Positions 2,444-51,797 of a DNA stretch of 64,000 nt are shown here, one piece after another. The notes beneath the pieces were generated by a model. The model worked only from the letters and a program-made list of their open reading frames with translations. It was not told the origin of the DNA and ran no database searches. Position 1 is the first letter of the stretch. Each line of letters opens with the position of its first letter. The position numbers and the translations under genes are program-made. The stretch is taken from positions 124,001-188,000 of IMG/VR virus record IMGVR_UViG_3300036715_004471; one strand, given 5' to 3'.

Positions 2444-3175
2444 ATGAAATTCTCTTCATTCTTATTCAGGGTCATATGTGGTTTGCTGTTATTGGTAACT
2501 ACGGCAAACTGTTGTTCAGGTTTTAACCATAGAGCGGAGGCGCCGGCGGGCAAACCGGCATATTTATTAGATAGCACGGTAGCGTTGGTGACGGGGAGTC
2601 CTGTTAATGAGTTTCAATATTACACATATTGTGCTGGGGTATGGATTTCTCCCGATCAATTTTTGACGGCGCACCACTGTATTATTCATGAAGAATATGA
2701 AACTAATATGATGGGGAAGATGGTTAGGTTTAAGACTCGTCGTGAAGTGAGTATTAGTAAGAATGAATTAACGGTGAGTGATCCGCATTATGGAGTAGTA
2801 GTAGCGATAGATTCTTTGCATGATTTAGCTTTAGTTAAGTCTGTAGATTTGGGATTGGAGCATTCTGTGGCAAAAATCAAGGAATCTGCTGTAGAGGTTG
2901 GGGAGGGAGTTAAGATAGTGGGGCACACTAGTGGATTAACTTATACTTATATAGTTGGGGTGGTATCAGCTATTAGGGTAGATTTCCCTGAGGATGGGGA
3001 TCATTATTTTCAGGTTTCGACGCCGGGGTATAAGGGGAATTCTGGTGGTGGATTATTTGATAATGATGGTAATTTGATGGGAATCTGTTCTAGTTTATTT
3101 AGAGGGGCGCCGAATGTAATTTTGTTTATTCACAAGGATGAGATGGTTAAGTTTTTGAGAGAGAATCAGATATAA
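2444..3175 (+). CDS. Trypsin-like (S1) serine protease with N-terminal signal/lipoprotein peptide
   Basis: Catalytic motifs TAHH, DLALV and GNSGG; hydrophobic N-terminus with Cys; AAGGAG RBS. Confidence 0.85.
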   Translation: MKFSSFLFRVICGLLLLVTTANCCSGFNHRAEAPAGKPAYLLDSTVALVTGSPVNEFQYYTYCAGVWISPDQFLTAHHCIIHEEYETNMMGKMVRFKTRREVSISKNELTVSDPHYGVVVAIDSLHDLALVKSVDLGLEHSVAKIKESAVEVGEGVKIVGHTSGLTYTYIVGVVSAIRVDFPEDGDHYFQVSTPGYKGNSGGGLFDNDGNLMGICSSLFRGAPNVILFIHKDEMVKFLRENQI

Positions 3176-3498
3176 GCTTTTAGTTTGGATAATCTTACAG
3201 CCACATCTTTCGCATTATTGGGGGAGATGTGGTTTGCATTTGGTAGATTATCCACGATAATTTTATCTTTTAGTTCTAGGGAATAGGTATTAGAGTTTAT
3301 GGCGAGGATTAGGTTATAGCCGGCTTGGGAGTCATCGGTTAATTCGAAATCTTTATTGAAATAGAAAGCCAGGACGAACAATTCATCTTTGAAGAAGCTA
3401 TGGTAGACTTTGCAATGTTCGCAGAAGGCGATATTAGGGATGAATGAGGTATTGAGTCTTTGTTCACAGAAGACGCAGGAGCGATTGAGAGTTTTCAT
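3166..3498 (-). CDS. CxxC zinc-ribbon family protein with C-terminal tag (RLSKLKAYI)
   Basis: CVFC and CEHC motifs; shared C-terminal motif. Confidence 0.75.
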   Translation of the reverse strand: MKTLNRSCVFCEQRLNTSFIPNIAFCEHCKVYHSFFKDELFVLAFYFNKDFELTDDSQAGYNLILAINSNTYSLELKDKIIVDNLPNANHISPNNAKDVAVRLSKLKAYI

Positions 3499-3884
3499 AG
3501 GAAAACCTTTTGATTCATGATACGTTTAACGAAGTCTTTAGCATTTTGCGGATTTATGGATGGGGGATGATCCATTTTAAAAATTGATATGGATTCAGCA
3601 TCAAGATATACTTGGGTTCGTTTAACTTCCAGCATTTCCAAGGTTTTATGAATAAGATCGATATTGATTAGGTATCTTGGGAAAGAATATTGATTTATTA
3701 GGAAACCAATCATTACTAATTTGCCGGGGACTCCATTGGGGGAATTTTCCTGATCGACCACATGGTTAACTTGGATTGGACAGTTATTACAATAGTATAT
3801 TTTATTGAAATCGAAGTATGTATTTCCGCTGCCCATATTATGGTTACAGAAGATGCAATTGAACTGTGTGGGGAAGAGGGTCAT
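3495..3884 (-). CDS. CxxC zinc-ribbon family protein with C-terminal tag (RIMNQKVFL)
   Basis: CIFC and CNNC motifs; 4-bp start/stop overlaps with neighbours. Confidence 0.75.
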   Translation of the reverse strand: MTLFPTQFNCIFCNHNMGSGNTYFDFNKIYYCNNCPIQVNHVVDQENSPNGVPGKLVMIGFLINQYSFPRYLINIDLIHKTLEMLEVKRTQVYLDAESISIFKMDHPPSINPQNAKDFVKRIMNQKVFL

Positions 3885-4207
3885 GAGAAAGCTTTTTGCT
3901 TTAATAAACGCTTTAGATATTGATGTGCTCCTTGTGGGGAGAGGTTAGGAACTTGGGACAATTGCAGAATGCACCGGTCTTTTCCATCTTGTTTATAGAG
4001 GGCGCAGCGATTTAAAATTGTATTTATATTGATGGAATATCGGGATCCTTTTTCATAAAGGAGGAAATCAAAGCTTATGGGGGTTTGATTACGGATATCG
4101 AAATTGTAAGAAACTTGAATGGGGCAATGCAAGCAAGTTAAGGAATAGCAGGGATATTTGGTATATACGCGATTAGATAATTGATTATTACAAAACTGAC
4201 ACTTCAA
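3881..4207 (-). CDS. CxxC zinc-ribbon family protein with C-terminal tag (RLLKQKAFS)
   Basis: CQFC and CLHC motifs. Likely TTG start at 4207 after GAGG; the ORF track extends it to 4321. Confidence 0.7.
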   Translation of the reverse strand: MKCQFCNNQLSNRVYTKYPCYSLTCLHCPIQVSYNFDIRNQTPISFDFLLYEKGSRYSININTILNRCALYKQDGKDRCILQLSQVPNLSPQGAHQYLKRLLKQKAFS

Positions 4208-4230
4208 TGGGCAACCTCTTTGCAGGGTTA

Positions 4231-4551
4231 TTAGGTAAATAGTAAATACAGGGAAAGCTTTTCTTTTAACTTTTCCAATTTGGGGAAATCCAGCTCCATA
4301 ATTTTTGGAATAGCCAGACACATTTTAGGATCTGTGGGCTCATAATAATAGAATGAGCATTGTTTCTCGAAATTAACCTCAAGGGAAGTATAATTATCGA
4401 GATAAACAACAATATGTTCCACTTTTTTATTGGTGGATTTTAATGAGAAAAAGTGGGCGGCGCTTTTGGCGCAGGTGCGATTGACACTTTGGTTAAAGGT
4501 TCTATTTTTTAATTTATTGTAGCAGATGGGACAGTGCGAGAGATCCTGCAT
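4231..4551 (-). CDS. CxxC zinc-ribbon family protein with C-terminal tag (KLSLYLLFT)
   Basis: CPIC motif and later C...H; shared C-terminal motif. Confidence 0.75.
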   Translation of the reverse strand: MQDLSHCPICYNKLKNRTFNQSVNRTCAKSAAHFFSLKSTNKKVEHIVVYLDNYTSLEVNFEKQCSFYYYEPTDPKMCLAIPKIMELDFPKLEKLKEKLSLYLLFT

Positions 4552-4572
4552 ACAGTATATATAACTTGAATT

Positions 4573-4926
4573 TTAGCTGAAGATAATGCACAGCTTTAAT
4601 TTGTTATACAGAGATTTTAAGTTAGAAAAATTTGGTTCAAAAAATGGAAGGATAATGGGATTATTTTCTATCATCTTACCATGCCAACGAGTGATAGAGA
4701 TATATTTCTTGTCTAAATTCCAACTTATCTCGTGTTGGTAATCGCCTCCCACCAGATAGATATCTCTAATGTTATCATCTTCGCCTGGAACAGATTCTAT
4801 ATACAGGCGATGATTTAATCTTCTCTTACAAGATTTGCGCAAGACAGTCTTGTTTGCATTAAGAGATGCCAAGTAATCATTTACCATTGGATCTCTACAT
4901 ACAGGGCACAAAGAGGGCATTTGCAT
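4573..4926 (-). CDS. CxxC zinc-ribbon family protein with C-terminal tag (KLKLCIIFS)
   Basis: CPVC motif and CKRRLNH; shared C-terminal motif. Confidence 0.75.
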   Translation of the reverse strand: MQMPSLCPVCRDPMVNDYLASLNANKTVLRKSCKRRLNHRLYIESVPGEDDNIRDIYLVGGDYQHEISWNLDKKYISITRWHGKMIENNPIILPFFEPNFSNLKSLYNKLKLCIIFS

Positions 4927-5695
4927 GTCTTTTTATAATCGCGTAAATTGTTGGAATAGATACTTCAAATAGCGAAGATAGTTCTTTATTTTTCATACCT
5001 TCATTGTAGTATTTTATCAATTCTATTTCTTTATCAAAAGAAAGTTTAATTTTTGATTTCGACATTTTTTGTCTAGTATCATCTGATTTTGCTTTACCTT
5101 TTTTAGGGATAGACATTTTTTCTTTTGTCTCTTCGCTAAGTTTTGATCCTAGTTTAGCTTCGGACATTGCTTGTCTAGTATCTAATGATCTTTTAACTCC
5201 TAGATTAGACTGAGATATTTTCTTTTTCCATTCTTCAGTTTTGGGGCGTCCTTTATGAGCTTTAGAAGCCTTCTCTCGCCACTCATCTGAATGTGGATTC
5301 AGTTTACCAATATTACTTTCAGAAATCTTCTTTCTTGAATCTTCAGAATGATGCTTTCCGTACATTGGCTGTTGTTCAGCGGGCAATCCAGTATTCCAAG
5401 CGGAATCGCCACCAGGTGCCAGATTATATCCCTTTTCTTTATTACGACTATCATATTGAATGATTAGTTGCTTTTCTGCCTCATTAGCATCTTCTTGTGT
5501 TAATGAGGTACAAATCACTTCATAAGTAAAATTATCAATCCCATACTTATTCATTGCTTTATGAATATATTGGTTAGTTTTGTCAGGATTTCTTCCAAAA
5601 TACTTATGCTGACGCCATCTTTCTTTTTCCTTATTAGACTGACCAATATAAACTTTTCCATTTAGTTGGTTTGTTATTTTATACAGATAAATCAT
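4895..5695 (-). mobile_element. Free-standing GIY-YIG homing endonuclease with NUMOD3 repeats
   Basis: IYLYKITNQLNGKVYIGQS, GYNL motif, and repeated (H)SE(D/E)xxxK(I/M)S units. Confidence 0.9.
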
Positions 5696-5733
5696 AATAT
5701 CTCCTCACAGAGTATATTATACTATGCGTATAA

Positions 5734-6081
5734 TTAAGAAAAAAGTAAATAGGTTTTGATTTTTTGTTTGATCTTATCGAGATTAGACAAATCAGTAGAG
5801 ATGATGCTTGGCACCTTGATGGGACGACGTTCGTTTGCTTTAGTCCACAAACTAGTGGTGTTATCTTGATAATTGAATTGTGCAAAGAACTTGTGGGCGC
5901 CGTCTTTGATTCTCAACTTCATAATTATTAATTCGCCGGCAGCCGATATTCTTTTTGCCAATAGATGATCCTCTTGTCGACAAACTAAATCCACATTCTT
6001 GGATGCAAAGACAGATTCTTCTGTTAATTGAGCGTTACAAATTGGACAAACATTGGACATAAATACCTTTGTATTACACAT
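5734..6081 (-). CDS. CxxC zinc-ribbon family protein with C-terminal tag (KIKTYLLFS)
   Basis: CPIC motif and CRQEDH; shared C-terminal motif. Confidence 0.75.
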   Translation of the reverse strand: MCNTKVFMSNVCPICNAQLTEESVFASKNVDLVCRQEDHLLAKRISAAGELIIMKLRIKDGAHKFFAQFNYQDNTTSLWTKANERRPIKVPSIISTDLSNLDKIKQKIKTYLLFS

Positions 6082-6108
6082 AAAACGCTATATATTTATA
6101 GCAAATGA

Positions 6109-6542
6109 ATGAAAGTCATTATGATAAGATATCACTCCAACAAAACTATTCTTAATTTTAGCGATGGCAAAATCTCTCGCAGTAGACTTAGAAAATCACT
6201 AAGCACTACCAAATTTATTCCATCTATCTATCAAAGCGAAGATTTGCGTTTTTCTTATGTAGAGAATGAAATTATCGTAGGAATGAAATTATCGTAGGAA
6301 TATATAAGATACGCATCCTACTTAATTGGGAAAAGGAAGGGGAATTCCTTCGCAATTACGGCGGATTTCAAATTCGAGTTTATCAAGGCAATGAAGAAAA
6401 AGAGATTGATTTAGAGTCAGACTGTCGATTTAACTTTCAGTCTTGGCTATCATTAAACCATAATTCAAAATTGAAAATCAAACATCTTGCAGAGATTATT
6501 ATCTATTGTCAGCGCCTCAATAAACTAAAAGTTTTCTTATGA
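6109..6542 (+). pseudogene. 138-aa tagged protein (ends RLNKLKVFL) frameshifted by a 17-bp tandem duplication
   Basis: Removing one copy of gaatgaaattatcgtag restores an open frame to TGA at 6540-6542. The C-terminal part resembles ORF 10903..11442. Confidence 0.8.
6264..6297 (+). repeat. Perfect 17-bp tandem duplication (gaatgaaattatcgtag x2)
   Basis: Read directly at 6264-6280 and 6281-6297. Confidence 0.95.
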
Positions 6543-7157
6543 AAATAAGATTAAAGTATTCATTTTGTTAATGAATGTCTGCTTGTTTTTGAACTTGGAC
6601 AAAGGTTGCAATGGCATTTTTAAATCGATAGGTTCTTCGTATTTTATGACTCTATCGGTTGGGACAGAGGTTTTAGCAACCATTAAAATTGACTCCTGAT
6701 TATCCCAATTTGATGTAAGAGAATACATCTTATCTGGCTCTTCAATCAGCAGAAATTCTTTACGTATTGACAATGGTTTTAATATCTTTTTATCAAGATC
6801 AAAAAGCATACTATGAGACCGTATGTAAGAACCACAACGAGTACATTTACTAGTGGCATACATTATATGCTCGGATAGATAATCTGTCAAGGCATTAATA
6901 TCTGAAATAATTTTGTTGCTTTTGTGTAAAATTCTCAAGTTAAGAGTGCCGTCAGAATAATTAACTTTCAAATCCATATCCACCATTTGGGGCGTAACTA
7001 CTGGATGAAGAATAATACCTTTTCCAGCCTTTGTTATAGGATGTTCCGCCATTGGATCATCAAGTTTCCTAGTAATAACCCTAAAAAATGTATTCTCTTG
7101 ACAAGAAAAACAAGGATTATTATAGGTGATAAAATCTTTAAGCGTTAGAAGTTTCAT
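6537..7157 (-). CDS. Long-form CxxC family protein with C-terminal tag (KMNTLILFS)
   Basis: CFSC and CTRC motifs; shared C-terminal motif. Confidence 0.75.
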   Translation of the reverse strand: MKLLTLKDFITYNNPCFSCQENTFFRVITRKLDDPMAEHPITKAGKGIILHPVVTPQMVDMDLKVNYSDGTLNLRILHKSNKIISDINALTDYLSEHIMYATSKCTRCGSYIRSHSMLFDLDKKILKPLSIRKEFLLIEEPDKMYSLTSNWDNQESILMVAKTSVPTDRVIKYEEPIDLKMPLQPLSKFKNKQTFINKMNTLILFS

Positions 7158-8242: not shown

Positions 8243-8301
8243 AATGGGCGTCCTTTCAAGGCACACAACGCAGGTAATATTTGTAGGGCGCCGATGGGAC
8301 G

Positions 8302-9021
8302 TCAAGACATAATGACCCAGGAGTCAAGCCTGTTGAATAATCTTTCTTTATCTTCAAAGTTAATTCGATTATTAAGCAGTGGCATTTCTCTTTCTAAGAG
8401 TTTGGGCTCAAAATCTTCTTTTGAAGCTTCCTCATCGGTAACAGTATAATGATGAAAAACAGTTTTCTTCTCTTCATTATCCAATACGATTACGTAAACT
8501 TTTTCCAAATTCCCAGTTTTATTCTTGACCACATAATATTCATCTCTGTTAATAATTCCATTGTCTTGAATATACTTTACTAATAGTTGTTGTTTTGATT
8601 CATATTCATCAAGTTTAATTAATGGGGTGGATCGATAATAACATCCATAATAAATATCAATTTGATGATCATATCCCAAATCACTTATCGCTCGTGGATT
8701 ACACAGATAATAAAAGTACAGACTTTTCTGATCTTTTGCCATTTTCTGTGCAGATAAAGTATTGAAATTAGCTACATAGTTATCTCCATCTTTTTTAAGA
8801 AGCATAACTATTTCTTGAGATTTTTTAGTATTTCCAAAACCAGAATTAGGCTTATTCTTAGAGTATTCATGCTCTTCAAACCTGATAGTATCATCATTTG
8901 ATTGAGACGCTTTAAAAAGCTTTTTAACATAATCTAATTCGGAACCTCCCCATTGCATATACAATGTAAGCGGTTCTTGACAAATGGGGCAAAGTTTATT
9001 GAAATTCAGGAAGTCTTTCAT
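8302..9021 (-). CDS. Long-form CxxC family protein with C-terminal tag (RLDSWVIMS)
   Basis: N-terminus [14 protein letters not shown]; variant of the tag. Confidence 0.75.
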
Positions 9022-9023
9022 AT

Positions 9024-9638
9024 TTATCCAAAATTAACGATTGTTTTGATTCTATTGAATACTTTATCTTTATTCTCTTGATCTATCTCTATCAAAGGCA
9101 AACTAATAGGTTTAGCATATTGCTTATTGGTCGTGTAAATATTAGTGGATAGTCTTATCATATCATTTTGAACCCAAAATTGGGAAACATTATAACACTC
9201 CCAATCAATCATAATAGGTTCGATTAAAGCACTAGCATGATCATTTACATTAAGTTTAAGATTGGTTGTTGTAATATAATATTTGCTGTAACATTTTTTA
9301 TTACAGCAATGTAACTCAACATTAACTTGAGCGTTTGTAATAACTCTTAATATCCCTATTAACTCAATATTAGCATCTATTAAATCATCTGCCTCATTGG
9401 CTTTTTCCATGTGAAAAAGATTAGAATTAACATCTATATGACAATTCTTATCAATGGATAAACTGGGAGAAGTGTATTTTACTCTAAATGAGAAAACATT
9501 GTTGATTAATCTAGAATTAATTAGCGGAAGGTTAATATTCCAGTAAGAACGTCCCTTCAAATAAGGAATTAAAGAATCTCCACAGATCGCGCAATGCGAC
9601 TTGATATCTAATAAATCTTTAATCTTACTATAAATCAT
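9024..9638 (-). CDS. Long-form CxxC family protein with C-terminal tag (RIKTIVNFG)
   Basis: CAIC and CCNKKC motifs; shared C-terminal motif. Confidence 0.75.
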   Translation of the reverse strand: MIYSKIKDLLDIKSHCAICGDSLIPYLKGRSYWNINLPLINSRLINNVFSFRVKYTSPSLSIDKNCHIDVNSNLFHMEKANEADDLIDANIELIGILRVITNAQVNVELHCCNKKCYSKYYITTTNLKLNVNDHASALIEPIMIDWECYNVSQFWVQNDMIRLSTNIYTTNKQYAKPISLPLIEIDQENKDKVFNRIKTIVNFG

Positions 9639-10205
9639 TTAGGAAAATGTGATAAGAGTTTTAATTTTGCGTAGCGTTTTTTCTTTATCTATCTTTCCAA
9701 AATTAATTAGCGGAAGTTCCGCTAATCCGCCCTTAGTAAGAGTATTATAAGGCGGCTCAATTATAATGTCAAGGACAATGGTTTTTTTATATTTGTAATC
9801 ATTAACAACTTTAAGATAAGATTTTTCATCTTTATGAAGTTTGAACGCTAATATTTCTAATTCTAGCGGACTAATGTATCCATCTTCGTTAAAAATCAAT
9901 GAAGAAGTTTTTATTAACAACCCGCACTCGCATGTCTTGTATATCTTGATTTTTTTAGAATTGAGGGCAACAGCAAGTTTTGATGATTCTTTAGTCCAAG
10001 AGGGAACTTGATAAGAATTATCTAATAAACCTATAGTAACATTTCTAAATAAAGACTGAGTAACCTGCAAGTTAATTTCATTATTTTGATATTCATAATT
10101 GAGCGACTCATTATGTTCACATCTAAAATCTTTGAAAGATAAGATTACAGGATCTTCGCACAGCATACATTGAGTATGAGATGTCATAAACTCAATCAAT
10201 TTCAT
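9639..10205 (-). CDS. Long-form CxxC family protein with C-terminal tag (KIKTLITFS)
   Basis: CMLC and CEC motifs; shared C-terminal motif. Confidence 0.75.
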   Translation of the reverse strand: MKLIEFMTSHTQCMLCEDPVILSFKDFRCEHNESLNYEYQNNEINLQVTQSLFRNVTIGLLDNSYQVPSWTKESSKLAVALNSKKIKIYKTCECGLLIKTSSLIFNEDGYISPLELEILAFKLHKDEKSYLKVVNDYKYKKTIVLDIIIEPPYNTLTKGGLAELPLINFGKIDKEKTLRKIKTLITFS

Positions 10206-10206
10206 A

Positions 10207-10902: not shown

Positions 10903-11442
10903 ATGACAAATAGATTGAGCACTCAAGAATATTACGATCTCATTAAAAAATTGATTGAACAGCAGTATACTGATGATTCAGAACCGGAATCAACCACATC
11001 TTATTCTGATGGGTGGATTCCTGCTTCACCTGAAATTAAACAAAAAATGAAGCTACTGGCGGATGAAGGAACTGTTGATTTAACTAATGTAAAAAGCAAC
11101 AAAATTAAAGAACTTATTATTCAATCCAAAAATAAGAGCGTTAAGAGTGGAATCAAAATTGGCGATTTTCTAATAAAAATTACACGTTCTGAATGTTACA
11201 ATCCTGATATGTCAGACTTAATTGTTGACATTTGCGTTTATGAAGAACAACATAAAACCAAATCAGGGGCACCGGCTAAATTATTATTCAAAATAGATAC
11301 TATTAAAGATAGTAGATTCACACAATGTTCTTGGAACAGTTATTTTAATCAATTCAAATCTGCTAAAAATGTACCGATTAACATATTGGTAGAAATTGTT
11401 AGGTGGCTCCGGGCGGTTAAAAAATTAACTGCATTTCTTTGA
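10903..11442 (+). CDS. Hypothetical protein with C-terminal tag (AVKKLTAFL), paralog of 6109..6542
   Basis: Likely ATG at 10903; shares an ID...D.RF....W...L.EI...KL..FL pattern with the frameshifted gene. Confidence 0.75.
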   Translation: MTNRLSTQEYYDLIKKLIEQQYTDDSEPESTTSYSDGWIPASPEIKQKMKLLADEGTVDLTNVKSNKIKELIIQSKNKSVKSGIKIGDFLIKITRSECYNPDMSDLIVDICVYEEQHKTKSGAPAKLLFKIDTIKDSRFTQCSWNSYFNQFKSAKNVPINILVEIVRWLRAVKKLTAFL

Positions 11443-14724: not shown

Positions 14725-15207
14725 ATGATAGATAGAAAATATCTAAAAGTAAAGCCTAGCAATTTAGATGGTAGTGGATTGTTTACTACTGTCAAAATAA
14801 ATGCCAGATATCCTATTATAGAAGTAACTGGCGATATTTTTGATTTATCTACTGTGCCTGATCATCCAGCTGTAATACAGGTTACTCCTAAGTTATTTAT
14901 AGGACCATCTGGAGGACCTGATGATTATATTAATCATAGTTGTAATCCTAATTGTTTTATCTCTATTATAGGAAATAGGGCAATTTTATATTCGTTGTAT
15001 GTAATTTCTCCAGACACAGAATTAACATTTGATTATTCTAGCGGCTCATCTGAATCATTAGATAGTTGGAAAATGAATTGTTCTTGTGGCGCAGTAACTT
15101 GTCGTAAAATCATCAGTGGATTTCAATATTTGACAGATGAGCAAAAGAAAGTTTTGCTGGATTTAAAGGCGGTTCCTCCATTTATCACGGATGGAATATT
15201 TAGATGA
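14725..15207 (+). CDS. SET-domain lysine methyltransferase with post-SET motif
   Basis: GSGLF, INHSCNPN, ELTFDY and CSCGAVTCR motifs. Confidence 0.9.
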   Translation: MIDRKYLKVKPSNLDGSGLFTTVKINARYPIIEVTGDIFDLSTVPDHPAVIQVTPKLFIGPSGGPDDYINHSCNPNCFISIIGNRAILYSLYVISPDTELTFDYSSGSSESLDSWKMNCSCGAVTCRKIISGFQYLTDEQKKVLLDLKAVPPFITDGIFR

Positions 15208-15482
15208 TCAAAACTCCTCATACTAAGATCTTAAGAATAATTGAAGGATTTCGTAGACTAGTGGATAATGTTTGTTCTTATGATCCATCATCTATTAATG
15301 AAATCATAGGAGATTTTAATATCTTCAATGAAGCGTGCGATGAATTAAGAGATGAATTAACAGCTAAAAAAAACTCTCTTGATGAAGTTGAAGAATTAGA
15401 AAGCAAGCAAAAGATTATTCAGCACGTTGATGAAATGAAGCCTATTATAGAGAAAATGATGAGTTTGAAAGCGTTTTGGTAA
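15204..15482 (+). CDS. Helical hypothetical protein with C-terminal tag (KMMSLKAFW)
   Basis: Operon position; shared C-terminal motif. Confidence 0.7.
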   Translation: MIKTPHTKILRIIEGFRRLVDNVCSYDPSSINEIIGDFNIFNEACDELRDELTAKKNSLDEVEELESKQKIIQHVDEMKPIIEKMMSLKAFW

Positions 15483-15483: not shown

Positions 15484-15765
15484 ATGAGACCATTTGAACC
15501 TATGAGCGGAAAAAGTAAATACGAAGCAATAGTTGATATTATAGATGATTTTTATGCCGATTTCAAAGATCAGGGGTATTTAGATCGAAGCTGTATCAAC
15601 GAATACAAGATGATTATTCAAATCTATAACTCATACAAAAAGAAAGTTGAATCAGAAAAAGATATACCAAAAGATGAATTAGACGGAATGATGAGTTTAA
15701 TTGAAAAAGTAGAAAAAATTAAACCTGAAGCGGACAGGTTACTTGCAATGAAATGTTTTTGGTAA
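15484..15765 (+). CDS. Helical hypothetical protein with C-terminal tag (RLLAMKCFW)
   Basis: Operon position; shared C-terminal motif. Confidence 0.7.
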   Translation: MRPFEPMSGKSKYEAIVDIIDDFYADFKDQGYLDRSCINEYKMIIQIYNSYKKKVESEKDIPKDELDGMMSLIEKVEKIKPEADRLLAMKCFW

Positions 15766-16022
15766 TAAGTGATAGATTTTTAGAAGATAATATAATAGTT
15801 GCTTTAAATCAGTTGGGCTTTGAAATAAAACAAAGCCCAACTGGACCAAGTGTTTATACATTTTATAAGAATGGTGTCTATGCAGGTGTGAGCTATTGTA
15901 ACACTAATGATTGTGAAGATAGAAAATTCATTCTACATGATCTATTTAATTCTCATTATAATGGAGCAATTATACCGAAAGAGGATTTAAAAAGAATGTT
16001 AAAAATGAAAGCTTTTTGGTGA
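15753..16022 (+). CDS. Hypothetical protein with C-terminal tag (RMLKMKAFW)
   Basis: Operon position; shared C-terminal motif. Confidence 0.7.
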   Translation: MFLVISDRFLEDNIIVALNQLGFEIKQSPTGPSVYTFYKNGVYAGVSYCNTNDCEDRKFILHDLFNSHYNGAIIPKEDLKRMLKMKAFW

Positions 16023-21152: not shown

Positions 21153-21339
21153 TCGCGTCACATATGAAATGCTAAGTTACTATGGTGTTAGTGTTGGTAA
21201 TTATATGATAAAATTGTATAATCCAGACTATTATGAAATAATTACTGATAGCAATGCTTCTGAATTTTCAGTATCAGGAAATAAAAAACTTGCTGCTTTA
21301 GCAATCGTAAAATATGTAGAAAAACAATGTCTGAACTAG
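21145..21339 (+). CDS. Hypothetical protein
   Basis: Likely ATG overlapping the end of thyX. Confidence 0.55.
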   Translation: MDNRVTYEMLSYYGVSVGNYMIKLYNPDYYEIITDSNASEFSVSGNKKLAALAIVKYVEKQCLN

Positions 21340-21491
21340 ATTATAGTACAATGGGAATTGGACCATTAGTATTCTATAAAAAACAAAACAGATTAGTAGT
21401 TGAAAGTAACTATAAAAATAACGAATTGGAAAGTTTACCAGAAATGTTGGATATAATCAACAACATTTTAAAGTTCAAAGCATTTTTCTAA
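21327..21491 (+). CDS. 54-aa protein with C-terminal tag (NILKFKAFF); not in the ORF track
   Basis: MSELDYSTMGIGPLVFYKKQNRLVVESNYKNNELESLPEMLDIINNILKFKAFF-stop. Confidence 0.65.
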   Translation: MSELDYSTMGIGPLVFYKKQNRLVVESNYKNNELESLPEMLDIINNILKFKAFF

Positions 21492-28349: not shown

Positions 28350-28898
28350 TTAGATGCGCAGAGACAAAATAGAATCTATTAATCTAACTCTTTCTTGCAT
28401 ACTATCAGTATTGATTTGAAAATATCTTAATTGAAACATTTCACACAGAAATTTAACCTGCGCATCAATTGAAATAATTCCATCCCAGGAAATAGCTTCT
28501 CTTATTCCGTCTTCTTTCAAAGTAGCTTTAGAAGGTCTGACAAAGAAAATATATGAATCGGGAGATTTTAATTCATCGATATACAATTGTAATTCTTTAG
28601 ATTTCAATAGTTTAGGAAGTATTCTACTATGTTGAGCGGCATAAGCCAAACAATCAAAACTTCTATCAGACACAAAGCTATCGAATTTACTTTCTTGCTC
28701 AATTTGCCTGCTGAATATCTTAGATTGATATTCATCAACTATATCCAAATTGGTTCTTAAAGAATCTAAATGTAATTCTTTTTCTGATAGAATCATTCTG
28801 GCTACTTCTGTAATCATAGGAATATTATATGTTTCTGAGACATATCTAGCACAAGTGGTTTTGCCAGTTGAATGAGATCCAATAAAGTATACTTTCAT
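28350..28898 (-). CDS. P-loop nucleoside/nucleotide kinase (AAA_28/NadR-like)
   Basis: GSHSTGKTT, ITEVAR and SDRSFD motifs. Confidence 0.8.
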   Translation of the reverse strand: MKVYFIGSHSTGKTTCARYVSETYNIPMITEVARMILSEKELHLDSLRTNLDIVDEYQSKIFSRQIEQESKFDSFVSDRSFDCLAYAAQHSRILPKLLKSKELQLYIDELKSPDSYIFFVRPSKATLKEDGIREAISWDGIISIDAQVKFLCEMFQLRYFQINTDSMQERVRLIDSILSLRI

Positions 28899-29377
28899 AC
28901 GAATGCCTTTAACTTTTCAAATTTTTCTAAAATGTGGAGAGTTTCATTTTCACTTAATGTGAACATCATTAAGTAAACGTCTTTATAATCATCACCATGA
29001 GGACAATCATAATCATGCGCGAATTGATAATCGACATAGTATATGGGTATTTTATCCCTACAATACTTTTCATAAATAGATCCTGACCAGCCTCTTTTAT
29101 TCAAGCATTGTAATATATATTTGCCAGCATTTACTTTATCTTGAGTCTTATGAATAGCTGTAATACAGAAATTTTCGTCAAATTTCTTATGAAAATCTAC
29201 GAATCCTTTTAGATATCCATAAGTAATAGGCTTTTTATTCTTTAAGAAATCGGTAATAGACAAAGATTCTGTCAATAAATACTTAGATGTTAACTCTTGC
29301 CATAAATCTTTGGCTTTGTCTTCAGCTTTTTGATTTATGAATTCGTCATTATGTTTTAATGATTTACGTCTGGACAT
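28895..29377 (-). CDS. Hypothetical protein with C-terminal tag (KFEKLKAFV)
   Basis: Shared C-terminal motif. Confidence 0.7.
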   Translation of the reverse strand: MSRRKSLKHNDEFINQKAEDKAKDLWQELTSKYLLTESLSITDFLKNKKPITYGYLKGFVDFHKKFDENFCITAIHKTQDKVNAGKYILQCLNKRGWSGSIYEKYCRDKIPIYYVDYQFAHDYDCPHGDDYKDVYLMMFTLSENETLHILEKFEKLKAFV

Positions 29378-30222: not shown

Positions 30223-30428
30223 GGTGCCCTTCTAAATATTGGTTTGGGTGGAATAAAAAATATCAAATCGGTAAATAATATTTTGCCAGCCGTTAATAAC
30301 AAATGTATATCGTCACCCGACCACCCTTCATTTAAGTAGTCAGTAATAATATCTTGTTCACTCATACCATTAGATAGTGCTTGAAAGATTATTTTTATGT
30401 GTTTATCGGCTAAATCAATATTTTTCAT
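30219..30428 (-). CDS. Hypothetical protein
   Basis: 69-aa ORF with coupled start/stop. Confidence 0.6.
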   Translation of the reverse strand: MKNIDLADKHIKIIFQALSNGMSEQDIITDYLNEGWSGDDIHLLLTAGKILFTDLIFFIPPKPIFRRAP

Positions 30429-30775
30429 AAGAATAACTTAAGTTTCTTAAATCTATTCCATCTGTACCAAAAATCTTTTACATCAGTACAGATCCCATAC
30501 TTTTTCTTATTGTTAGATAATTCGAAGACCCAAGGGTATATATTTTGCCAACTATGCCAAGTTGGACCAACTTGTCTGCCCTTAACAATTATTGTGCTAG
30601 AACTTTTGAAAATCTTTTTAGGAATAGGTAAGAAGAAGTTTTTTCTTTCACATGGGAACAGTTTCATAAACTCTACCAATAATTCATGTGAATGTTTTTC
30701 TATTTCTTGTTTGATTTCATTCCATTGATTCATACAAAAGACCTCACTCTTGAAAACTTCTTCCATCTTTTCCAA
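30425..30775 (-). CDS. Hypothetical protein with C-terminal tag (RFKKLKLFL)
   Basis: Shared C-terminal motif. Confidence 0.65.
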   Translation of the reverse strand: MEKMEEVFKSEVFCMNQWNEIKQEIEKHSHELLVEFMKLFPCERKNFFLPIPKKIFKSSSTIIVKGRQVGPTWHSWQNIYPWVFELSNNKKKYGICTDVKDFWYRWNRFKKLKLFL

Positions 30776-30846: not shown

Positions 30847-31089
30847 TTAATTTCTAGCAACCTTCATTTTAACAGCAATTATATTCTGCTCAGCCACATA
30901 TTCTTTGTTTCTTACCTCTACAGTATGAACTGGATTCTTACATGGAAAAAGTTCCTCAAATTTTCTTATAGTTTTCCAGGAGAATTTAGACAATTCTTCG
31001 TCAATTAATCTATTCGCCCTACGAGTCTCGCGGTGCTCGTCGCCATATTTTTCGTCATCTTCAGTATAAATTACAACATCATCAACCAT
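30847..31089 (-). CDS. Hypothetical protein
   Basis: Likely start MVDDV after AAGGTG. Confidence 0.55.
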   Translation of the reverse strand: MVDDVVIYTEDDEKYGDEHRETRRANRLIDEELSKFSWKTIRKFEELFPCKNPVHTVEVRNKEYVAEQNIIAVKMKVARN

Positions 31090-31445
31090 GTCAGCACCTT
31101 GTTTCTTATATTTGTTGGAGATATTGCCAAACACTCATCATAGGAATATATAATTCTACCACAAATCAAATTGGTTTTGTTTTTCATCAAATCTAATTGA
31201 ACAGTATAAGATTTTTCATTAATTTCTGTATCAATTTCTAATTTGATCAGAATATCATCTTTACCAATATACTGACATTTACAATTTTTGTAGTAATAAT
31301 AGCATTTGGTTTCGGATAAAAGATGAGCCTTAATGTCTTCTTTGCAATACAAACAATTAAAAAACTTCTCCCTTTTCTCATGTAAAAAAGATCTATTTAA
31401 TTGTCCTTGACTAGAAATGAATACTAAGTCAGATTTTTCCGACAT
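31071..31445 (-). CDS. CxxC family protein with C-terminal tag variant (KVLTWLMML)
   Basis: CLYC and CKC motifs; ISPTN before the tag matches ISPNN/INPQN in 3166..4207. Confidence 0.7.
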   Translation of the reverse strand: MSEKSDLVFISSQGQLNRSFLHEKREKFFNCLYCKEDIKAHLLSETKCYYYYKNCKCQYIGKDDILIKLEIDTEINEKSYTVQLDLMKNKTNLICGRIIYSYDECLAISPTNIRNKVLTWLMML

Positions 31446-41665: not shown

Positions 41666-42029
41666 AGGTCACTTTCTTTACATCGTCATTAACATGATGC
41701 TCTTTGAGCTTCTCTGCAATGATTTTCTTTTCTTGCTCATTCAAAAGTGTTTTCAATTCCGCCATGTTTTTGAGTCTAAGTTGATCATTACTTGGCTTGG
41801 CATATTCTTCCTCAAATTGAGAAGATAAATCACTTTTTAATTTTTCAGGCTCTTTCAGTATGATTTTGATCACAACTATATCCTGCGATGAATGTTGGAT
41901 AATAGAAACAGATGAGTTATCTAAAGATCGTAATACTGATTTGGCATCTGACCAAGATTCCACAATACCATCGATTATCAAATTGTTGCGTAACAAGCAT
42001 CTAATATGTTGTCCTATTTGTGGAATCAT
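41628..42029 (-). CDS. Hypothetical protein
   Basis: 133-aa ORF. Confidence 0.65.
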   Translation of the reverse strand: MIPQIGQHIRCLLRNNLIIDGIVESWSDAKSVLRSLDNSSVSIIQHSSQDIVVIKIILKEPEKLKSDLSSQFEEEYAKPSNDQLRLKNMAELKTLLNEQEKKIIAEKLKEHHVNDDVKKVTYGTPGFFKKTAK

Positions 42030-42277
42030 AAAAATGCCCTTATGTTTACTATTCTTTCCATTTTTTCAATCAATTCCTCAAGAGTGTCTTCGGTGTATAG
42101 AAAACAACAAATAGCATCATCTGATATTCTAGAATCACTAATATGAAAACAGATAATTTTATCAATATTTTGATCTAAATCATCGGGGAAATTCAAAAAG
42201 GATATTAAGAATTTCATACTATTTTTTATGTAGCTTGTAACATCTTCTTCTATTGTTTCTATTTTAGCAATCGTCAT
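42026..42277 (-). CDS. Hypothetical protein with C-terminal tag (RIVNIRAFL)
   Basis: Shared C-terminal motif. Confidence 0.65.
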   Translation of the reverse strand: MTIAKIETIEEDVTSYIKNSMKFLISFLNFPDDLDQNIDKIICFHISDSRISDDAICCFLYTEDTLEELIEKMERIVNIRAFL

Positions 42278-42411
42278 GCCCACTTAATATTCAATGAAGG
42301 TAATATGTGATGAGGAGACATCCCATTGAATCTTTTTGCATATTTGCCATATGATTCTAGTATCATACAATAACACTCATAATTTCTTTATTGGAGAATA
42401 TTTTAATGAAA

Positions 42412-42798
42412 TCATAAAAATGCTTTCAACTTATTAATTTTTAATACCTTCTTAAGATCATCAACACTAGAACTAGAAATAGCAATAATGTTGTAATAAC
42501 AAAAATTAGGGTGAAATTTATTTAATTTAGAATACATAACTACATAATTTTTGTTAGATAATTGTTTTTCAAGTTGATTTTTCATTAATTCTAACTGATT
42601 ATCATGCGGATTACCATGCTGATGATTTAGTAATATGATTTTATCTTTTTCTGGTTGGTATTTTTGGAATAACATGGTTCCTCCGCCAATATATGGAATT
42701 GATAAAATTTTACATCCCTCTTTAATTAAAGACAAAGAAACATTATAATCAGTATCTAAAAAATGTTTGACATCTTGCGCATCAACATAGGTAATCAT
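42412..42798 (-). CDS. Hypothetical protein with C-terminal tag (KINKLKAFL)
   Basis: Shared C-terminal motif. Confidence 0.7.
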   Translation of the reverse strand: MITYVDAQDVKHFLDTDYNVSLSLIKEGCKILSIPYIGGGTMLFQKYQPEKDKIILLNHQHGNPHDNQLELMKNQLEKQLSNKNYVVMYSKLNKFHPNFCYYNIIAISSSSVDDLKKVLKINKLKAFL

Positions 42799-47684: not shown

Positions 47685-47722
47685 TTCATTATCTAAGTAA
47701 GTTGTAGTTACAAAATTAAAAA

Positions 47723-47989: not shown

Positions 47990-47996
47990 ATCTTTC

Positions 47997-48956: not shown

Positions 48957-49150
48957 ATAGCCTTTTCAAATCTTGAAACCCAAGAACCTTCAATTTGCAC
49001 TTGTTCTAAAAACATTGATAAGGGACGAGCCCAATATTGATCTTTGAGATCTCTATAGATCACCATATCTTCCAAAGTTTCAGTATGTTTAGCAATTGAA
49101 ACCACTTCGTATAATTTGCCTTTATAGTGCCTGTAAATTCCAAGTTCCAT
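48953..49150 (-). CDS. DUF1653-family protein
   Basis: GIYRHYKG...HTET...YWARPLSMF. Confidence 0.85.
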   Translation of the reverse strand: MELGIYRHYKGKLYEVVSIAKHTETLEDMVIYRDLKDQYWARPLSMFLEQVQIEGSWVSRFEKAI

Positions 49151-49155
49151 ATTTA

Positions 49156-50121: not shown

Positions 50122-50164
50122 ACTTCATCTCTTTATGAAAGTTCGCTATGTCTATATCTTGTAG

Positions 50165-50404
50165 TTAAGGATTATTTTTGAATTGTAGGGCACCAATAAT
50201 AACAGATTTATTAACTTTTGTGATGCCACTGGTATTAATAATTGCAATACCTATTGTTTCTTTGACAGTAAATCCTATTTTACCTATGTTTCTTTTAACG
50301 CGTAATTTACCACCAGATGTAATTACAAGACGGCGATGTGCCTCTAAATGAACCATACCTGGATCGGCGGATAAAATAGTTAATTCTTGTCTAATAGGTT
50401 CCAT
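50165..50404 (-). CDS. Hypothetical protein
   Basis: 79-aa ORF. Confidence 0.55.
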   Translation of the reverse strand: MEPIRQELTILSADPGMVHLEAHRRLVITSGGKLRVKRNIGKIGFTVKETIGIAIINTSGITKVNKSVIIGALQFKNNP

Positions 50405-50407
50405 TAT

Positions 50408-51544
50408 TCACTCGCACAAAGAAATGATTCTTTCAGTTACATTCTTCCAAGTATAATGAGGTAATATTTCCTGCATCTTGGGTGAGAATTTGGCTAAGTA
50501 ATCATCATAATTAGCAATAACATCTTTCAATTTCTTCGCACATTCATCAATATCTGGAGCAAACACTTTTGCATAAGGAGATGGTTCCCAATACTGCATC
50601 TTAATATCGGCACGAATTTCTTTTCCACCAATTAGAATAGAGTTATCATCATTCATATAATCAAGTTGTCCACCATAACGCGGAGCAACAACAATCTTAT
50701 TGGCGGCGAATCCTTCTAACCCGGGCATCCAAAAACATTCGCTATTTGCCATGGTAATTACCATGTCACAAGCATTATAAAGACATTCAATATCTACAAT
50801 GAATTTGTCCAGAATTTCTATGTCTCCATGATTTTTGAATTTAGTTTTGAATTCTTTAAGAATCTCATCAAAATTCACTTCGAAAGAAGATTTATTACTA
50901 CGTTTTGAAATTTTCAGAACCAAACATACATCATCATTTTTAGTGAATGCTTTGCCGTATGTTTTTAACAAATTAGGAATATTCTTTCTTAAATGGGGCT
51001 GAGCAATATTGGCAAGTATCTTATATTTCTTTTTTGTTTTAAGAGGATATTTGGACAAATTCTGAAATCTATCTAAATGAATACCGTGATGTATCGTCAC
51101 TTGATTCTCATCAGGTATTCCATTGTCTACAAATATCTTCTTTGAAAAGGATGAAGATGGCAATACCTTATCAACAGCTTTGTAACATTTGGCAAATGCT
51201 GTCGGTAAGACAGTTGTTTCATAATTCCAAATACCAAATCTATTTTTGTTTCCTCTTACAAAGTAATGAGGGAAATTCTTCAAAGCAGTATATGATAGCT
51301 GCATATCATATTTGGTATCCAATTTGGAACCAATTAAAGATTGGTAATTGTTCGATGTAATTTGTGTATGCTCTTCTATAGCGCCCTTTAGATTTGATTT
51401 AAGATCATCTGGAAAATACTCTAAACCATTGGTAGAGAATAAATCTACTTCATGACCCAATCTGATTAGTTCTCTTGAAATATTTTGAGCTACAATGGAC
51501 CAACTATGGTTTTTGCCCAAAAACCCAAACCAACATACTTTCAT
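50408..51544 (-). CDS. GT4-family glycosyltransferase
   Basis: GHEVDLF, HHGI, RKN and ECFWMPGLEGFA (EX7E) motifs. Confidence 0.88.
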   Translation of the reverse strand: MKVCWFGFLGKNHSWSIVAQNISRELIRLGHEVDLFSTNGLEYFPDDLKSNLKGAIEEHTQITSNNYQSLIGSKLDTKYDMQLSYTALKNFPHYFVRGNKNRFGIWNYETTVLPTAFAKCYKAVDKVLPSSSFSKKIFVDNGIPDENQVTIHHGIHLDRFQNLSKYPLKTKKKYKILANIAQPHLRKNIPNLLKTYGKAFTKNDDVCLVLKISKRSNKSSFEVNFDEILKEFKTKFKNHGDIEILDKFIVDIECLYNACDMVITMANSECFWMPGLEGFAANKIVVAPRYGGQLDYMNDDNSILIGGKEIRADIKMQYWEPSPYAKVFAPDIDECAKKLKDVIANYDDYLAKFSPKMQEILPHYTWKNVTERIISLCE

Positions 51545-51560
51545 GTCAAGCCTTATATCA

Positions 51561-51797
51561 TCAGGTAAAAACTAATAGGTCGAGCAGCCTGCAAAACTCA
51601 TCTTCAGAGTAAACTTGCTGTTCATACTCGAAAGTATTATTTACTGCATTTTGTACGAAAAATGGTTTAATATTCGGAGTTATTTTGCTAAAACTCTCCG
51701 TGTAAACCATAATCAGTTTTTTGTCGTTTGGGTTAAACGCAAACAAAAAATATGGCAATACTTTTTCCATCTTTTCTCTGACTTTTCCATAAATCAT
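51561..51797 (-). CDS. Hypothetical protein with C-terminal tag (RLLDLLVFT)
   Basis: Shared C-terminal motif; has its own promoter upstream. Confidence 0.65.
   Translation of the reverse strand: MIYGKVREKMEKVLPYFLFAFNPNDKKLIMVYTESFSKITPNIKPFFVQNAVNNTFEYEQQVYSEDEFCRLLDLLVFT

What the first reader, a model, noticed from the sequence alone, without database searches (positions are those of the whole stretch)
3166..51797. A shared C-terminal nonapeptide tag on 22 otherwise diverse small proteins: candidate adaptor/targeting system
Seen: the last nine residues are RLSKLKAYI (3166), RIMNQKVFL (3495), RLLKQKAFS (3881), KLSLYLLFT (4231), KLKLCIIFS (4573), KIKTYLLFS (5734), RLNKLKVFL (6109, repaired), KMNTLILFS (6537), RLDSWVIMS (8302), RIKTIVNFG (9024), KIKTLITFS (9639), AVKKLTAFL (10903), KMMSLKAFW (15204), RLLAMKCFW (15484), RMLKMKAFW (15753), NILKFKAFF (21327), KFEKLKAFV (28895), RFKKLKLFL (30425), KVLTWLMML (31071), RIVNIRAFL (42026), KINKLKAFL (42412) and RLLDLLVFT (51561). 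Aligned to the stop codon, position -9 is R/K in 20/22, -8 is hydrophobic in 22/22, -5 is hydrophobic in 20/22 and -2 is Phe in 19/22 (Tyr or Met otherwise). The genes lie on both strands in several operons and have different bodies (Zn ribbons, helical, mixed). None of the recognisable enzymes carries the tag. Inference: this is a free-C-terminus amphipathic helix read by one partner, giving a 'variable body + constant docking tail' library. Known analogies are HbYX tails that dock on proteasomes, T4 gp33/gp55 C-terminal clamp-binding peptides, and C-terminal degrons. It could recruit host targets (e.g. defence proteins) to a protease or chaperone, route proteins to a compartment or the virion, or set a shared turnover rate.
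Basis: partly seen in the sequence, partly recalled or inferred. Interest (0 to 1): 0.92.

Follow-up and report, generated by a model that had tools for sequence, protein, structure and literature searches.

The report
Shared tail helix on megaphage proteins
Dozens of small proteins of an uncultured ~450-kb phage, and a nucleotide kinase in its close relatives, end in the same 16-18-residue helix placed exactly at the C-terminus; it most likely acts as a common docking or address tag, but what reads it is unknown.

Summary
All 22 nonapeptides exist and are followed by a stop codon. A matrix built from them, applied to other contigs, marks 219 of 1395 C-termini but only 6e-5 of internal 9-mers, and essentially only at offset 0.

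The window is part of a 446-kb IMG/VR megaphage. "22 diverse proteins" is overstated:
- 11 belong to one zinc-ribbon paralog family with 1670 clusters in public data.
- The other 11 fall into about 8 families.

The motif is longer than nine residues; it is a 14-20-residue terminal helix. AlphaFold2 places it confidently inside the fold in two families (beta-sheet plus C-terminal helix), so it is not a floppy tag.

It is modular, though:
- Bodies share no profile similarity once the tail is removed.
- The tail also sits on beta-hairpin-repeat proteins with 1-4 repeats.
- In close relatives it is a 17-18-residue add-on to a dNMP kinase. More distant kinase homologs lack it.

Best reading (about 0.5): a docking/address helix read by a common, unidentified partner that also serves as a structural cap. 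Main rival (about 0.25): a purely structural capping helix. No hub was found.

The parts
3166..3498 (-). Zn-ribbon family member, 110 aa, tail RLSKLKAYI (class 1-like)
3495..3884 (-). Zn-ribbon family member, 129 aa, tail RIMNQKVFL
3881..4321 (-). Zn-ribbon family member (longest ORF 146 aa; the true start is probably further in), tail RLLKQKAFS; paralog of 3495-3884
4231..4551 (-). Zn-ribbon family member, 106 aa, tail KLSLYLLFT (class 2)
4573..4926 (-). Zn-ribbon family member, 117 aa, tail KLKLCIIFS
5734..6081 (-). Zn-ribbon family member, 115 aa, tail KIKTYLLFS; this is the protein modelled with AlphaFold2 (7 strands plus C-terminal helix, pLDDT 93)
6109..6542 (+). Broken member of the 10801-type family, tail RLNKLKVFL; frame disrupted by a 17-bp tandem duplication at 6264-6297
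6537..7157 (-). Two-domain Zn-ribbon family member, 206 aa, tail KMNTLILFS
8302..9021 (-). Two-domain Zn-ribbon family member, 239 aa, tail RLDSWVIMS (Met at -2, conserved as WI[IL]MS in orthologs)
9024..9638 (-). Two-domain Zn-ribbon family member, 204 aa, tail RIKTIVNFG
9639..10205 (-). Two-domain Zn-ribbon family member, 188 aa, tail KIKTLITFS
10903..11442 (+). Non-Zn family (21 members in the fetched loci), 179 aa, tail AVKKLTAFL; AlphaFold2 gives N-terminal helices, 5 strands and a C-terminal helix at 159-178
15204..15482 (+). 92-aa protein, helical by composition, tail KMMSLKAFW; paralog of 15484-15765
15484..15765 (+). 93-aa paralog, tail RLLAMKCFW
15753..16022 (+). 89-aa protein, tail RMLKMKAFW; weak profile link to the 51561 family
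21327..21491 (+). 54-aa protein, tail NILKFKAFF
28895..29377 (-). 160-aa protein, tail KFEKLKAFV; no Pfam family
30425..30775 (-). 116-aa protein, tail RFKKLKLFL
31071..31445 (-). Dispersed Zn-ribbon family member, 124 aa, weak tail KVLTWLMML; joins the family by HMM iteration
42026..42283 (-). 85-aa protein, tail RIVNIRAFL; orthologs in relatives keep the tail
42412..42798 (-). 128-aa protein, tail KINKLKAFL; ortholog in L039 keeps the tail
51561..51797 (-). 78-aa protein, tail RLLDLLVFT; up to three tandem copies in relatives

Best explanation
The 'tag' is a modular C-terminal alpha-helix of about 14-20 residues that ends exactly one residue after a conserved Phe.

Two forms occur:
- Class 1: h-x-[RK]-h-x-K-[LM]-K-A-F-[WLI].
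- Class 2: P-D-F-x-[DN]-L-x-K-L-K-x-K-[ILV]-K-T-Y-h-h-F-S.

It is used by many lineage-specifically expanded small-protein families of one clade of roughly 180-500-kb uncultured megaphages.

Shown:
- It is under amino-acid-level selection.
- It is strictly anchored to the stop codon.
- It is retained while the bodies diverge beyond recognition.
- It sits on at least three kinds of body: zinc-ribbon beta-meander proteins, beta-hairpin repeat proteins and a P-loop dNMP kinase.
- In the kinase it was added as an extension.

Inferred: the helix is a common docking or address handle read by one clade-specific partner. That partner would recognise the conserved basic residues at -9, -6 and -4, the LxxF-hydrophobic last turn and the free terminus. 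This would bring a changing repertoire of small, probably host-interaction, proteins and at least one nucleotide enzyme to the same place. In the beta-sheet families the same helix also packs on the sheet as a structural cap.

The partner is unknown. My split of the 0.5 is:
- about 0.15 for a replication/transcription hub such as a sliding clamp;
- about 0.15 for virion or ejection-protein targeting like the T4 capsid targeting sequence;
- about 0.2 for another phage or host hub or compartment.
For: - Anchoring and enrichment on independent contigs.
- Protein-level selection.
- Diversity of bodies: 407 distinct tail-bearing ORFs fall into 120 BLAST-level body clusters.
- Profile similarity between families is confined to the tail.
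- Homologs that truly lack the tail are few, and several of these look degraded.
- Hairpin-repeat number varies from 1 to 4 while the tail stays constant.
- dNMP kinase, Pfam DNMK 57 bits. Its six closest homologs (71-100% identity) all carry the extension. None of the remaining, more distant homologs listed ends in the motif.
- The kinase tail is as conserved as the enzyme body, 0.75 against 0.75 pairwise identity.
- Basic residues are conserved at positions that are probably solvent-exposed (inferred from helical periodicity, not measured): R/K at -9 in 68 of 72 non-Zn clusters, K at -4 in 53 of 72, and K at -9 in 136 of 150 Zn-family representatives.
- Pattern scans of IMG/VR find the tail almost only in this clade.
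- The Zn-ribbon family (the only family searched this way) was not found in 185,579 bacterial and archaeal genomes or in cultured phages.
Against: - AlphaFold2 models of two families place the helix as a confident part of a compact fold (pLDDT 92-95 with pTM 0.83; about 77-92 with pTM 0.71). That fits a purely structural role.
- Most tail families look like small beta-sheet proteins, so they could share ancestry.
- Only one enzyme lineage with the tail was found.
- No candidate receptor was seen in the window.
- No multimer prediction or experiment was possible.
- Selecting 'tail-bearing' ORFs with the matrix makes the tail logos partly circular.
Confidence: 0.5

Rival explanations
1. Purely structural capping helix. 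All tail-bearing proteins would be one very fast-evolving superfamily (or one architecture) of small single-layer beta-sheet or beta-hairpin-repeat proteins. Their only hydrophobic core lies between the sheet and this terminal helix, so the helix is the one element that cannot vary. No common partner would exist.
For: - AlphaFold2 gives strands followed by a confident C-terminal helix in both modelled families.
- The ~200-aa members and the repeat proteins lengthen the sheet but keep a single terminal helix.
- The conserved hydrophobic positions at -11/-12, -8, -5 and -2, together with Pro/Gly depletion, fit a packed helix.
- Zn-ribbon members carry both tail classes, which links the classes.
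Against: - The tail was added to a P-loop dNMP kinase, which has no beta-hairpin sheet to cap, and it is conserved there as strongly as the enzyme.
- The exact distance to the C-terminus is kept (219 hits at offset 0 against 2 at other offsets). The basic residues are also conserved. A core helix does not require either.
- 15204 and 15484 look all-helical by composition. This is inferred and was not modelled.
- Bodies show no profile similarity.
Confidence: 0.25
2. Membrane-targeting amphipathic helix, like the C-terminal membrane targeting sequences of MinD or FtsA, which would hold these proteins at the inner membrane.
For: - The tail is C-terminal, helical, hydrophobic with Phe, and has a net charge of about +1.6 over the last 16 residues.
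- The resemblance to MinD/FtsA tails rests on established knowledge, not on a test made here.
Against: - The hydrophobic moment is only 0.31, against 0.24 for internal segments, and only 3% of tails exceed 0.5.
- Exact anchoring to the stop codon and a small residue at -3 are not needed for membrane binding.
- AlphaFold2 packs the helix on the body with high confidence.
Confidence: 0.08
3. C-terminal degron or turnover signal read by a host or phage protease, setting a shared lifetime for early proteins.
For: - Strict anchoring to the free C-terminus, as with known C-terminal degrons (established knowledge).
- A trypsin-like peptidase gene at 2444-3175 abuts the array.
Against: - Conservation extends over 14-20 helical residues, not just 2-5 terminal ones.
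- The helix is predicted to be folded into the domain.
- The neighbouring peptidase has a signal peptide and lipobox, so it is probably exported.
- A degron on a dNMP kinase is hard to explain.
Confidence: 0.08
4. Nucleotide-level signal (translational coupling, promoter or terminator in the 3' end of each gene) or an AT-rich compositional artefact.
For: - 138 of 288 tail genes overlap the next start codon as ATGA.
- The third base of the last codon is biased to A.
Against: - Synonymous codon usage at -2, -5 and -9, including CGN against AGR for Arg, equals genome usage.
- Tails also occur on genes at the ends of operons.
- Spurious ORFs and shuffled termini do not show the motif.
Confidence: 0.01

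Closest known systems
Capsid targeting sequence (CTS) of T4-type internal proteins (IPI-III, Alt)
   Same: A short conserved terminal peptide is the only thing shared by a highly diverse, fast-changing set of small phage proteins, plus an enzyme (PMC3012670). The genes sit in variable arrays, and the peptide is modular and transferable.
   Different: The CTS is N-terminal, about 10 residues long, and is cut off by the prohead protease. This tail is C-terminal, helical and 14-20 residues long, and no conserved cleavage motif precedes it. Presence in the virion is untested, and there is no sequence resemblance.
Encapsulation peptides of bacterial microcompartments and cargo-loading peptides of encapsulins
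   Same: Terminal peptides on unrelated cargo proteins dock on one shell protein. Microcompartment peptides are short amphipathic helices, and encapsulin peptides are C-terminal (established knowledge).
   Different: No shell or encapsulin gene was seen in the window. Encapsulin peptides are extended and rich in Gly/Ser rather than helical. Here AlphaFold2 packs the helix on the body rather than leaving it on a flexible linker.
Sliding-clamp binding motifs (PIP box Qxx[LIM]xx[FY][FY]; bacterial QL[SD]LF; C-terminal tails of T4 gp43, gp33 and gp55)
   Same: The motif is at the extreme C-terminus. Class 1 tails end in [LM]-x-x-F-[WLI], which has the same spacing as the hydrophobic plug of a PIP box. 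The tail occurs on a nucleotide-metabolism enzyme and amid replication genes. One hub would serve many clients.
   Different: There is no Gln; position -8 is hydrophobic. The tail is basic, not acidic as in T4. Class 2 tails end in F-S. It is a long helix, not a disordered peptide. No clamp gene was identified and no binding was tested.
Lineage-specific expansion of zinc-ribbon proteins in Bacillus phage G (Iyer et al. 2021, PMC7824862)
   Same: About 35 copies of a small zinc-ribbon protein in a ~500-kb phage. Phage G's tubulin-like protein is the only cultured-phage match to the window's. The function is unknown; the authors proposed transcription factors or DNA-binding proteins.
   Different: tblastn found no similarity. 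The small N-terminal CxxC proteins in the first 50 kb of phage G end differently and score low with the tail matrix. Only 50 kb of its 497 kb was examined.
MinD/FtsA C-terminal membrane targeting sequences; PTS1 (SKL-COOH); ssrA-type C-terminal degrons
   Same: All are C-terminal signals on otherwise unrelated proteins. PTS1 and degrons are read together with the free carboxylate, which would explain the exact anchoring to the stop codon.
   Different: The motif here is much longer, helical and predicted to be partly packed. Its hydrophobic moment is modest. The last residues (F-S, F-L, F-W) match none of these signals.

Membership tests
T4-type capsid targeting sequence | Located at the N-terminus and removed by the prohead protease | tested here: not met
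   The motif is anchored to the C-terminus. No conserved cleavage-type motif precedes it; position -10 is E in only about 20-25% of sequences.
T4-type capsid targeting sequence | The only element shared by otherwise diverse small proteins in variable loci | tested here: met
   120 body clusters. Profile similarity is confined to the tail. Array size differs between relatives.
T4-type capsid targeting sequence | Carrier proteins are packaged in the virion | not testable with these tools
   The clade is uncultured and no proteomics data are available.
PIP-box / clamp-binding motif | Gln at motif position 1 (three residues before the first hydrophobic) | tested here: not met
   Position -8 is hydrophobic in 22 of 22 window tails and in nearly all others.
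PIP-box / clamp-binding motif | h-x-x-aromatic-aromatic/hydrophobic at the extreme terminus | tested here: inconclusive
   Met by class 1: L/M at -5 in 63 of 72 clusters, F at -2 in 71 of 72, W/L/I at -1. Not met by class 2 tails, which end in F-S.
PIP-box / clamp-binding motif | Physical binding to a sliding clamp encoded by the phage or the host | not testable with these tools
   No multimer prediction was available, and no clamp gene was recognised in the window.
MinD/FtsA-type membrane targeting sequence | Strongly amphipathic C-terminal helix detached from the folded domain | tested here: inconclusive
   Hydrophobic moment 0.31 against 0.24 for the background. AlphaFold2 places the helix at pLDDT 92-95 within a model of pTM 0.83.
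Encapsulin / microcompartment cargo peptides | Shell protein genes in the neighbourhood | tested here: not met
   None among the window proteins scanned with Pfam and PHROGs. Only 64 kb of the 446 kb was seen.
MORN repeat proteins (for the hairpin-repeat bodies) | Match to the Pfam MORN models | tested here: not met
   The proteins scanned included six repeat proteins. None gave a MORN hit at E<=0.01, and one matched DUF6745. The repeat W-x-x-N-G-x-x-H-R-x-D-G-P-A resembles MORN only by eye.
Phage G zinc-ribbon expansion | Sequence homology to the phage G zinc-ribbon proteins | tested here: inconclusive
   tblastn gave no hit. In the first 50 kb of phage G, the small CxxC proteins lack the tail. 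The rest of the genome was not examined.
C-terminal degrons (ssrA-like) | Signal carried by the last 2-5 residues, small and hydrophobic at the very end | tested here: not met
   Conservation spans 14-20 residues, and the ends are F-S, F-L or F-W.

The most novel reading that the evidence does not exclude
A protein-sorting code encoded by a bacteriophage. One receptor would read a ~17-residue, stop-anchored C-terminal helix on about 50 or more proteins per genome, including hypervariable zinc-ribbon and hairpin-repeat arrays and at least one nucleotide enzyme. It would route them to one destination: virion, replication factory, compartment or host machine. That would be a bacterial-virus counterpart of PTS1 or the T4 capsid targeting sequence, with a new motif and a new reader.
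Probability: 0.4. Interest if true: 0.9.

Novelty: new variant of a known kind. Interest (0 to 1): 0.7.

Why it matters
If the tail is an address or docking tag, it gives a one-line rule for picking out a whole functional class among the otherwise unannotatable small genes of huge phages. The zinc-ribbon family alone has more than 1600 clusters, and 407 tail-bearing ORFs were seen here. It also gives a handle, the tail peptide, for fishing out the hub they converge on, and a portable tag for delivering cargo to that site. The copy-number variation and hypervariable bodies suggest an arms-race repertoire such as anti-defence or host take-over, so the hub could be central to how megaphages control their hosts. 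If the tail is only a structural cap, the result still defines a large, previously undescribed fold family specific to megaphages.

Tried and rejected
- DNA similarity to cultured phages: none. A Zn-family member by tblastn against phages: none.
- Pfam and PHROGs on the window's tail proteins: nothing significant.
- PDB sequence searches with both family profiles: only generic zinc-ribbon noise.
- Foldseek against the PDB for both models: no hit with E<0.001. The best for the Zn model were p32/C1QBP and the OspA sheet at TM about 0.4.
- Foldseek against BFVD: only uncharacterised proteins, nearly all from entries named 'uncultured Caudovirales phage'.
- The first hhalign run used a wrong mode and stale files. 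It was discarded and redone.
- Tail-region word search in the 5.8-billion-protein set: only 3 candidates, uninformative.
- Phage G: only the first 50 kb was examined, and it has no tail. The rest was not fetched because the expected value was low.
- Rfam on the whole window: no match.
- Looking for a hub among unannotated window proteins by PDB sequence search: nothing.
- A second IMG/VR pattern (EF.[RK]hh.LK.F.-stop) added no new kind of body. Most of its newly fetched loci were on contigs where no tail-bearing ORF was called.
I found no evidence or mechanism for it, beyond small known effects of the last residues on termination.

Full report
**What the window is**

The window is AT-rich (GC about 0.33). 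It carries genes typical of a very large phage:
- ribonucleotide reductase, a DnaB-like helicase with a DnaC-like loader, and PhoH;
- a tubulin-like protein and a sigma-factor-like protein;
- dUTPase, ThyX, a GMP-reductase/IMPDH-type enzyme and a dNMP phosphatase;
- two giant ORFs of 1331 and 2369 aa.

It has no DNA match among 50,697 cultured-phage records. It is 100% identical to part of IMG/VR contig IMGVR_UViG_3300036715_004471, which is 446,541 bp. Dozens of related contigs of 180-480 kb exist.

**Check of the observation**

All 22 nonapeptides are present and each is followed by a stop codon.

The stronger test uses independent data. A matrix built only from the 22 window peptides was applied to ORFs of other contigs.
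- It scores >=10 bits at 219 of 1395 C-termini.
- It scores that high at 6e-5 of internal 9-mers.
- It does so only when the motif ends exactly at the terminus: 219 hits at offset 0, 2 hits at offsets 1-12.
- Shuffling each terminal 9-mer gives 1.4 hits on average.
- Overlapping, mostly spurious ORFs give 16 of 3445.

Synonymous codon usage at positions -2, -5 and -9 equals genome usage, including the split of Arg between CGN and AGR. The constraint is therefore on the protein. Only the last codon's third base is biased, because 138 of 288 tail genes overlap the next start as ATGA.

The conserved element is longer than nine residues. It is poor in Pro and Gly: 13% of tails contain either, against 67% of internal 14-mers. 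In both models it is helical.

**How independent the 22 are**

- The ten genes from 3166 to 10205 and the gene at 31071 all begin with a CxxC...C zinc ribbon and form one family.
- The four ~200-aa members match the family profile twice and look like internal duplications with a single terminal helix.
- In relatives this array is syntenic and can reach about 25 tandem copies.
- A profile of the family finds 1670 clusters (E<=0.001) among 1.84 billion representatives. The 150 best matches listed are about 100-140 aa (one is 204 aa), and nearly all match end to end. Their consensus is PDF[SP][DN]LxKLKxK[IVL]KTY[LIV]xFS.
- The ten representatives looked up carry no informative name, and the longest contigs that hold them are 450-500 kb.
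- The family was not found in 185,579 bacterial and archaeal genomes or in cultured phages.

The other eleven fall into about eight sequence families:
- 6109 (broken) with 10801;
- 15204 with 15484;
- 15753, weakly linked to 51561;
- 21327, 28895, 30425, 42026 and 42412 on their own.

**Is the tail part of a fold or a tag?**

Both appear to be true.

AlphaFold2 on a zinc-ribbon member (59-sequence alignment) gives pLDDT 93 and pTM 0.83. The model has seven strands followed by a C-terminal helix at pLDDT 92-95. The 10801 family gives N-terminal helices, five strands and a 20-residue terminal helix, with pLDDT 74 and pTM 0.71. Neither model has a significant match in the PDB. The first matches only uncharacterised proteins, nearly all from 'uncultured Caudovirales phage' entries, in BFVD. 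So the helix is not a floppy appendage.

Four results argue that the helix is more than a fold element.
1. Profile-profile alignments between families are tail-to-tail only (P from 1e-5 to 0.05). Nothing is left when the last 18 residues are removed. The 407 distinct tail-bearing ORFs fall into 120 body clusters.
2. A scan of IMG/VR for [KR]h..hKAFW-stop returned 67 loci, most of them on large AT-rich contigs of this clade, including the window's own. It also exposed a large second family. Its body is 1-4 copies of a beta-hairpin repeat (W-x-x-N-G-x-x-H-R-x-D-G-P-A), always ending in C-x-T-[ST]-Q-E-E-F-E-R-L-M-K-L-K-A-F-W, in arrays of up to 11 copies.
3. A 217-aa dNMP kinase (Pfam DNMK, 57 bits, domain ending near residue 187) on contigs from the same samples as close relatives ends in FNSADEFRRILKLKSFL.
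   - Its six closest homologs (71-100% identity) all keep this 17-18-residue extension.
   - The more distant homologs that align to the end of the domain stop at the kinase's last helix, and none of the other listed homologs scores above zero with the matrix.
   - Among the tailed kinases the tail is as conserved as the enzyme, 0.75 against 0.75.
4. Basic residues, which are probably solvent-exposed (inferred from helical periodicity, not measured), are conserved across unrelated bodies. The distance to the free terminus never varies.

**Mechanism**

What is shown is a modular helix, selected at the protein level and anchored to the terminus, on unrelated bodies within one phage clade.

What I infer is that it is a docking or address handle for a common partner, and that in the beta-sheet families it also serves as the capping helix. 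I give this about 0.5.

The identity of the partner is open.
- For a replication/transcription hub such as a sliding clamp: the last five residues of class 1 tails ([LM]-K-A-F-[WLI]) have the spacing of a clamp-binding plug; the one enzyme that gained the tail makes DNA precursors; and the tail genes lie among replication and nucleotide genes.
- Against that hub: the tail has no Gln, it is basic, and class 2 tails end in F-S.
- The T4 capsid targeting sequence is the closest conceptual precedent. There, a terminal peptide is the only thing shared by a diverse set of internal anti-restriction proteins (PMC3012670). That peptide is N-terminal and is cleaved off.

The kinase case is the chief argument against it. 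A membrane-targeting helix is weakened by the modest hydrophobic moment, 0.31 against 0.24. A degron is weakened by the length and predicted packing of the motif, and by the signal peptide and lipobox on the adjacent trypsin-like peptidase. A nucleotide-level signal is excluded.

**Known or new**

I found no paper describing this motif. The nearest published observation is the roughly 35-copy zinc-ribbon expansion in Bacillus phage G (PMC7824862). Phage G's tubulin-like protein is the only cultured-phage match to the window's. The zinc-ribbon proteins in the first 50 kb of phage G lack the tail.

I rate the finding a new variant of a known kind (terminal targeting or docking peptides), with interest 0.7.

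**Limits**

- Gene calls are a greedy longest-ORF heuristic.
- The tail logos come from ORFs chosen with the matrix.
- Only two families were modelled, and no coordinates or multimer predictions were available.
- Only 64 kb of the 446-kb genome, plus scattered loci of relatives, were seen.

Noticed in passing
window 1-2000: GC-rich island (GC 0.47-0.66 per 250 bp) inside a genome of GC about 0.33. Its ORFs have no Pfam hit, Rfam finds nothing, and the DNA is not conserved in relatives. GC-rich-looking stretches (judged from ORF amino-acid composition, not computed) also sit next to the zinc-ribbon array in relatives (L049 about 13.6-20 kb, L050 about 14.3-21 kb).
   Followed up: partly
window 2444-3175 (+): Trypsin-like serine peptidase (Pfam Trypsin_2) with an N-terminal signal peptide and lipobox-like Cys, convergent with the array and overlapping its end. 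A similar lipoprotein-like gene flanks the array in L050.
   Followed up: partly
window 7157-8305 (-): Phage-encoded release factor of the RF2 type (PCRF and RF-1 domains, SPF and GGQ motifs), embedded in the zinc-ribbon array in the window and in every relative inspected (L049, L050, L052, L062, L067). TAG is only about 2% of stop codons in long ORFs of the clade, which hints at stop-codon manipulation. No in-frame recoding was evident in the window.
   Followed up: partly
window 6264-6297: A perfect 17-bp tandem duplication (GAATGAAATTATCGTAG twice) shifts the frame of the 6109-6542 tail gene and creates a TAG stop. Relatives have intact orthologs of 138-152 aa. This is either a pseudogene or an assembly error.
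   Followed up: yes
window 4895-5695 (-): GIY-YIG / NUMOD3 homing-endonuclease-like gene inserted within the zinc-ribbon array.
   Followed up: no
window 14725-15207 (+): SET-domain protein immediately followed by three KAFW-type tail genes. In L049 and L050 the matching ~160-aa gene also sits next to KAFW tail genes (flanked on both sides in L049).
   Followed up: partly
window 45005-46414 (-): Tubulin-like protein (weak PHROG PhuZ hit). Its only cultured-phage match is Bacillus phage G at 23% identity. It is well conserved (63-87%) in 47 related IMG/VR loci.
   Followed up: partly
window 51859-55854 and 55862-62971 (-): Two adjacent giant ORFs of 1331 and 2369 aa with no PHROG family. They are not in the same reading frame.
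   Followed up: no
window 16026-16661 (+) / 24073-24660 (-); 29364-30038 / 41105-41665 (-); 17555-18466 / 18473-19192 (-): Three further paralog pairs: RNase T-like exonucleases; proteins of which one is endonuclease VII-like, at 42% identity; and two unannotated neighbouring genes.
   Followed up: no
L118, L127, L134 (IMG/VR contigs 3300036893_000036 and 3300048502_000185): Tandem arrays of up to 11 genes made of 1-4 beta-hairpin repeats (W.xNG..HR.DGPA) plus the KAFW tail. Pfam does not recognise them as MORN.
   Followed up: partly
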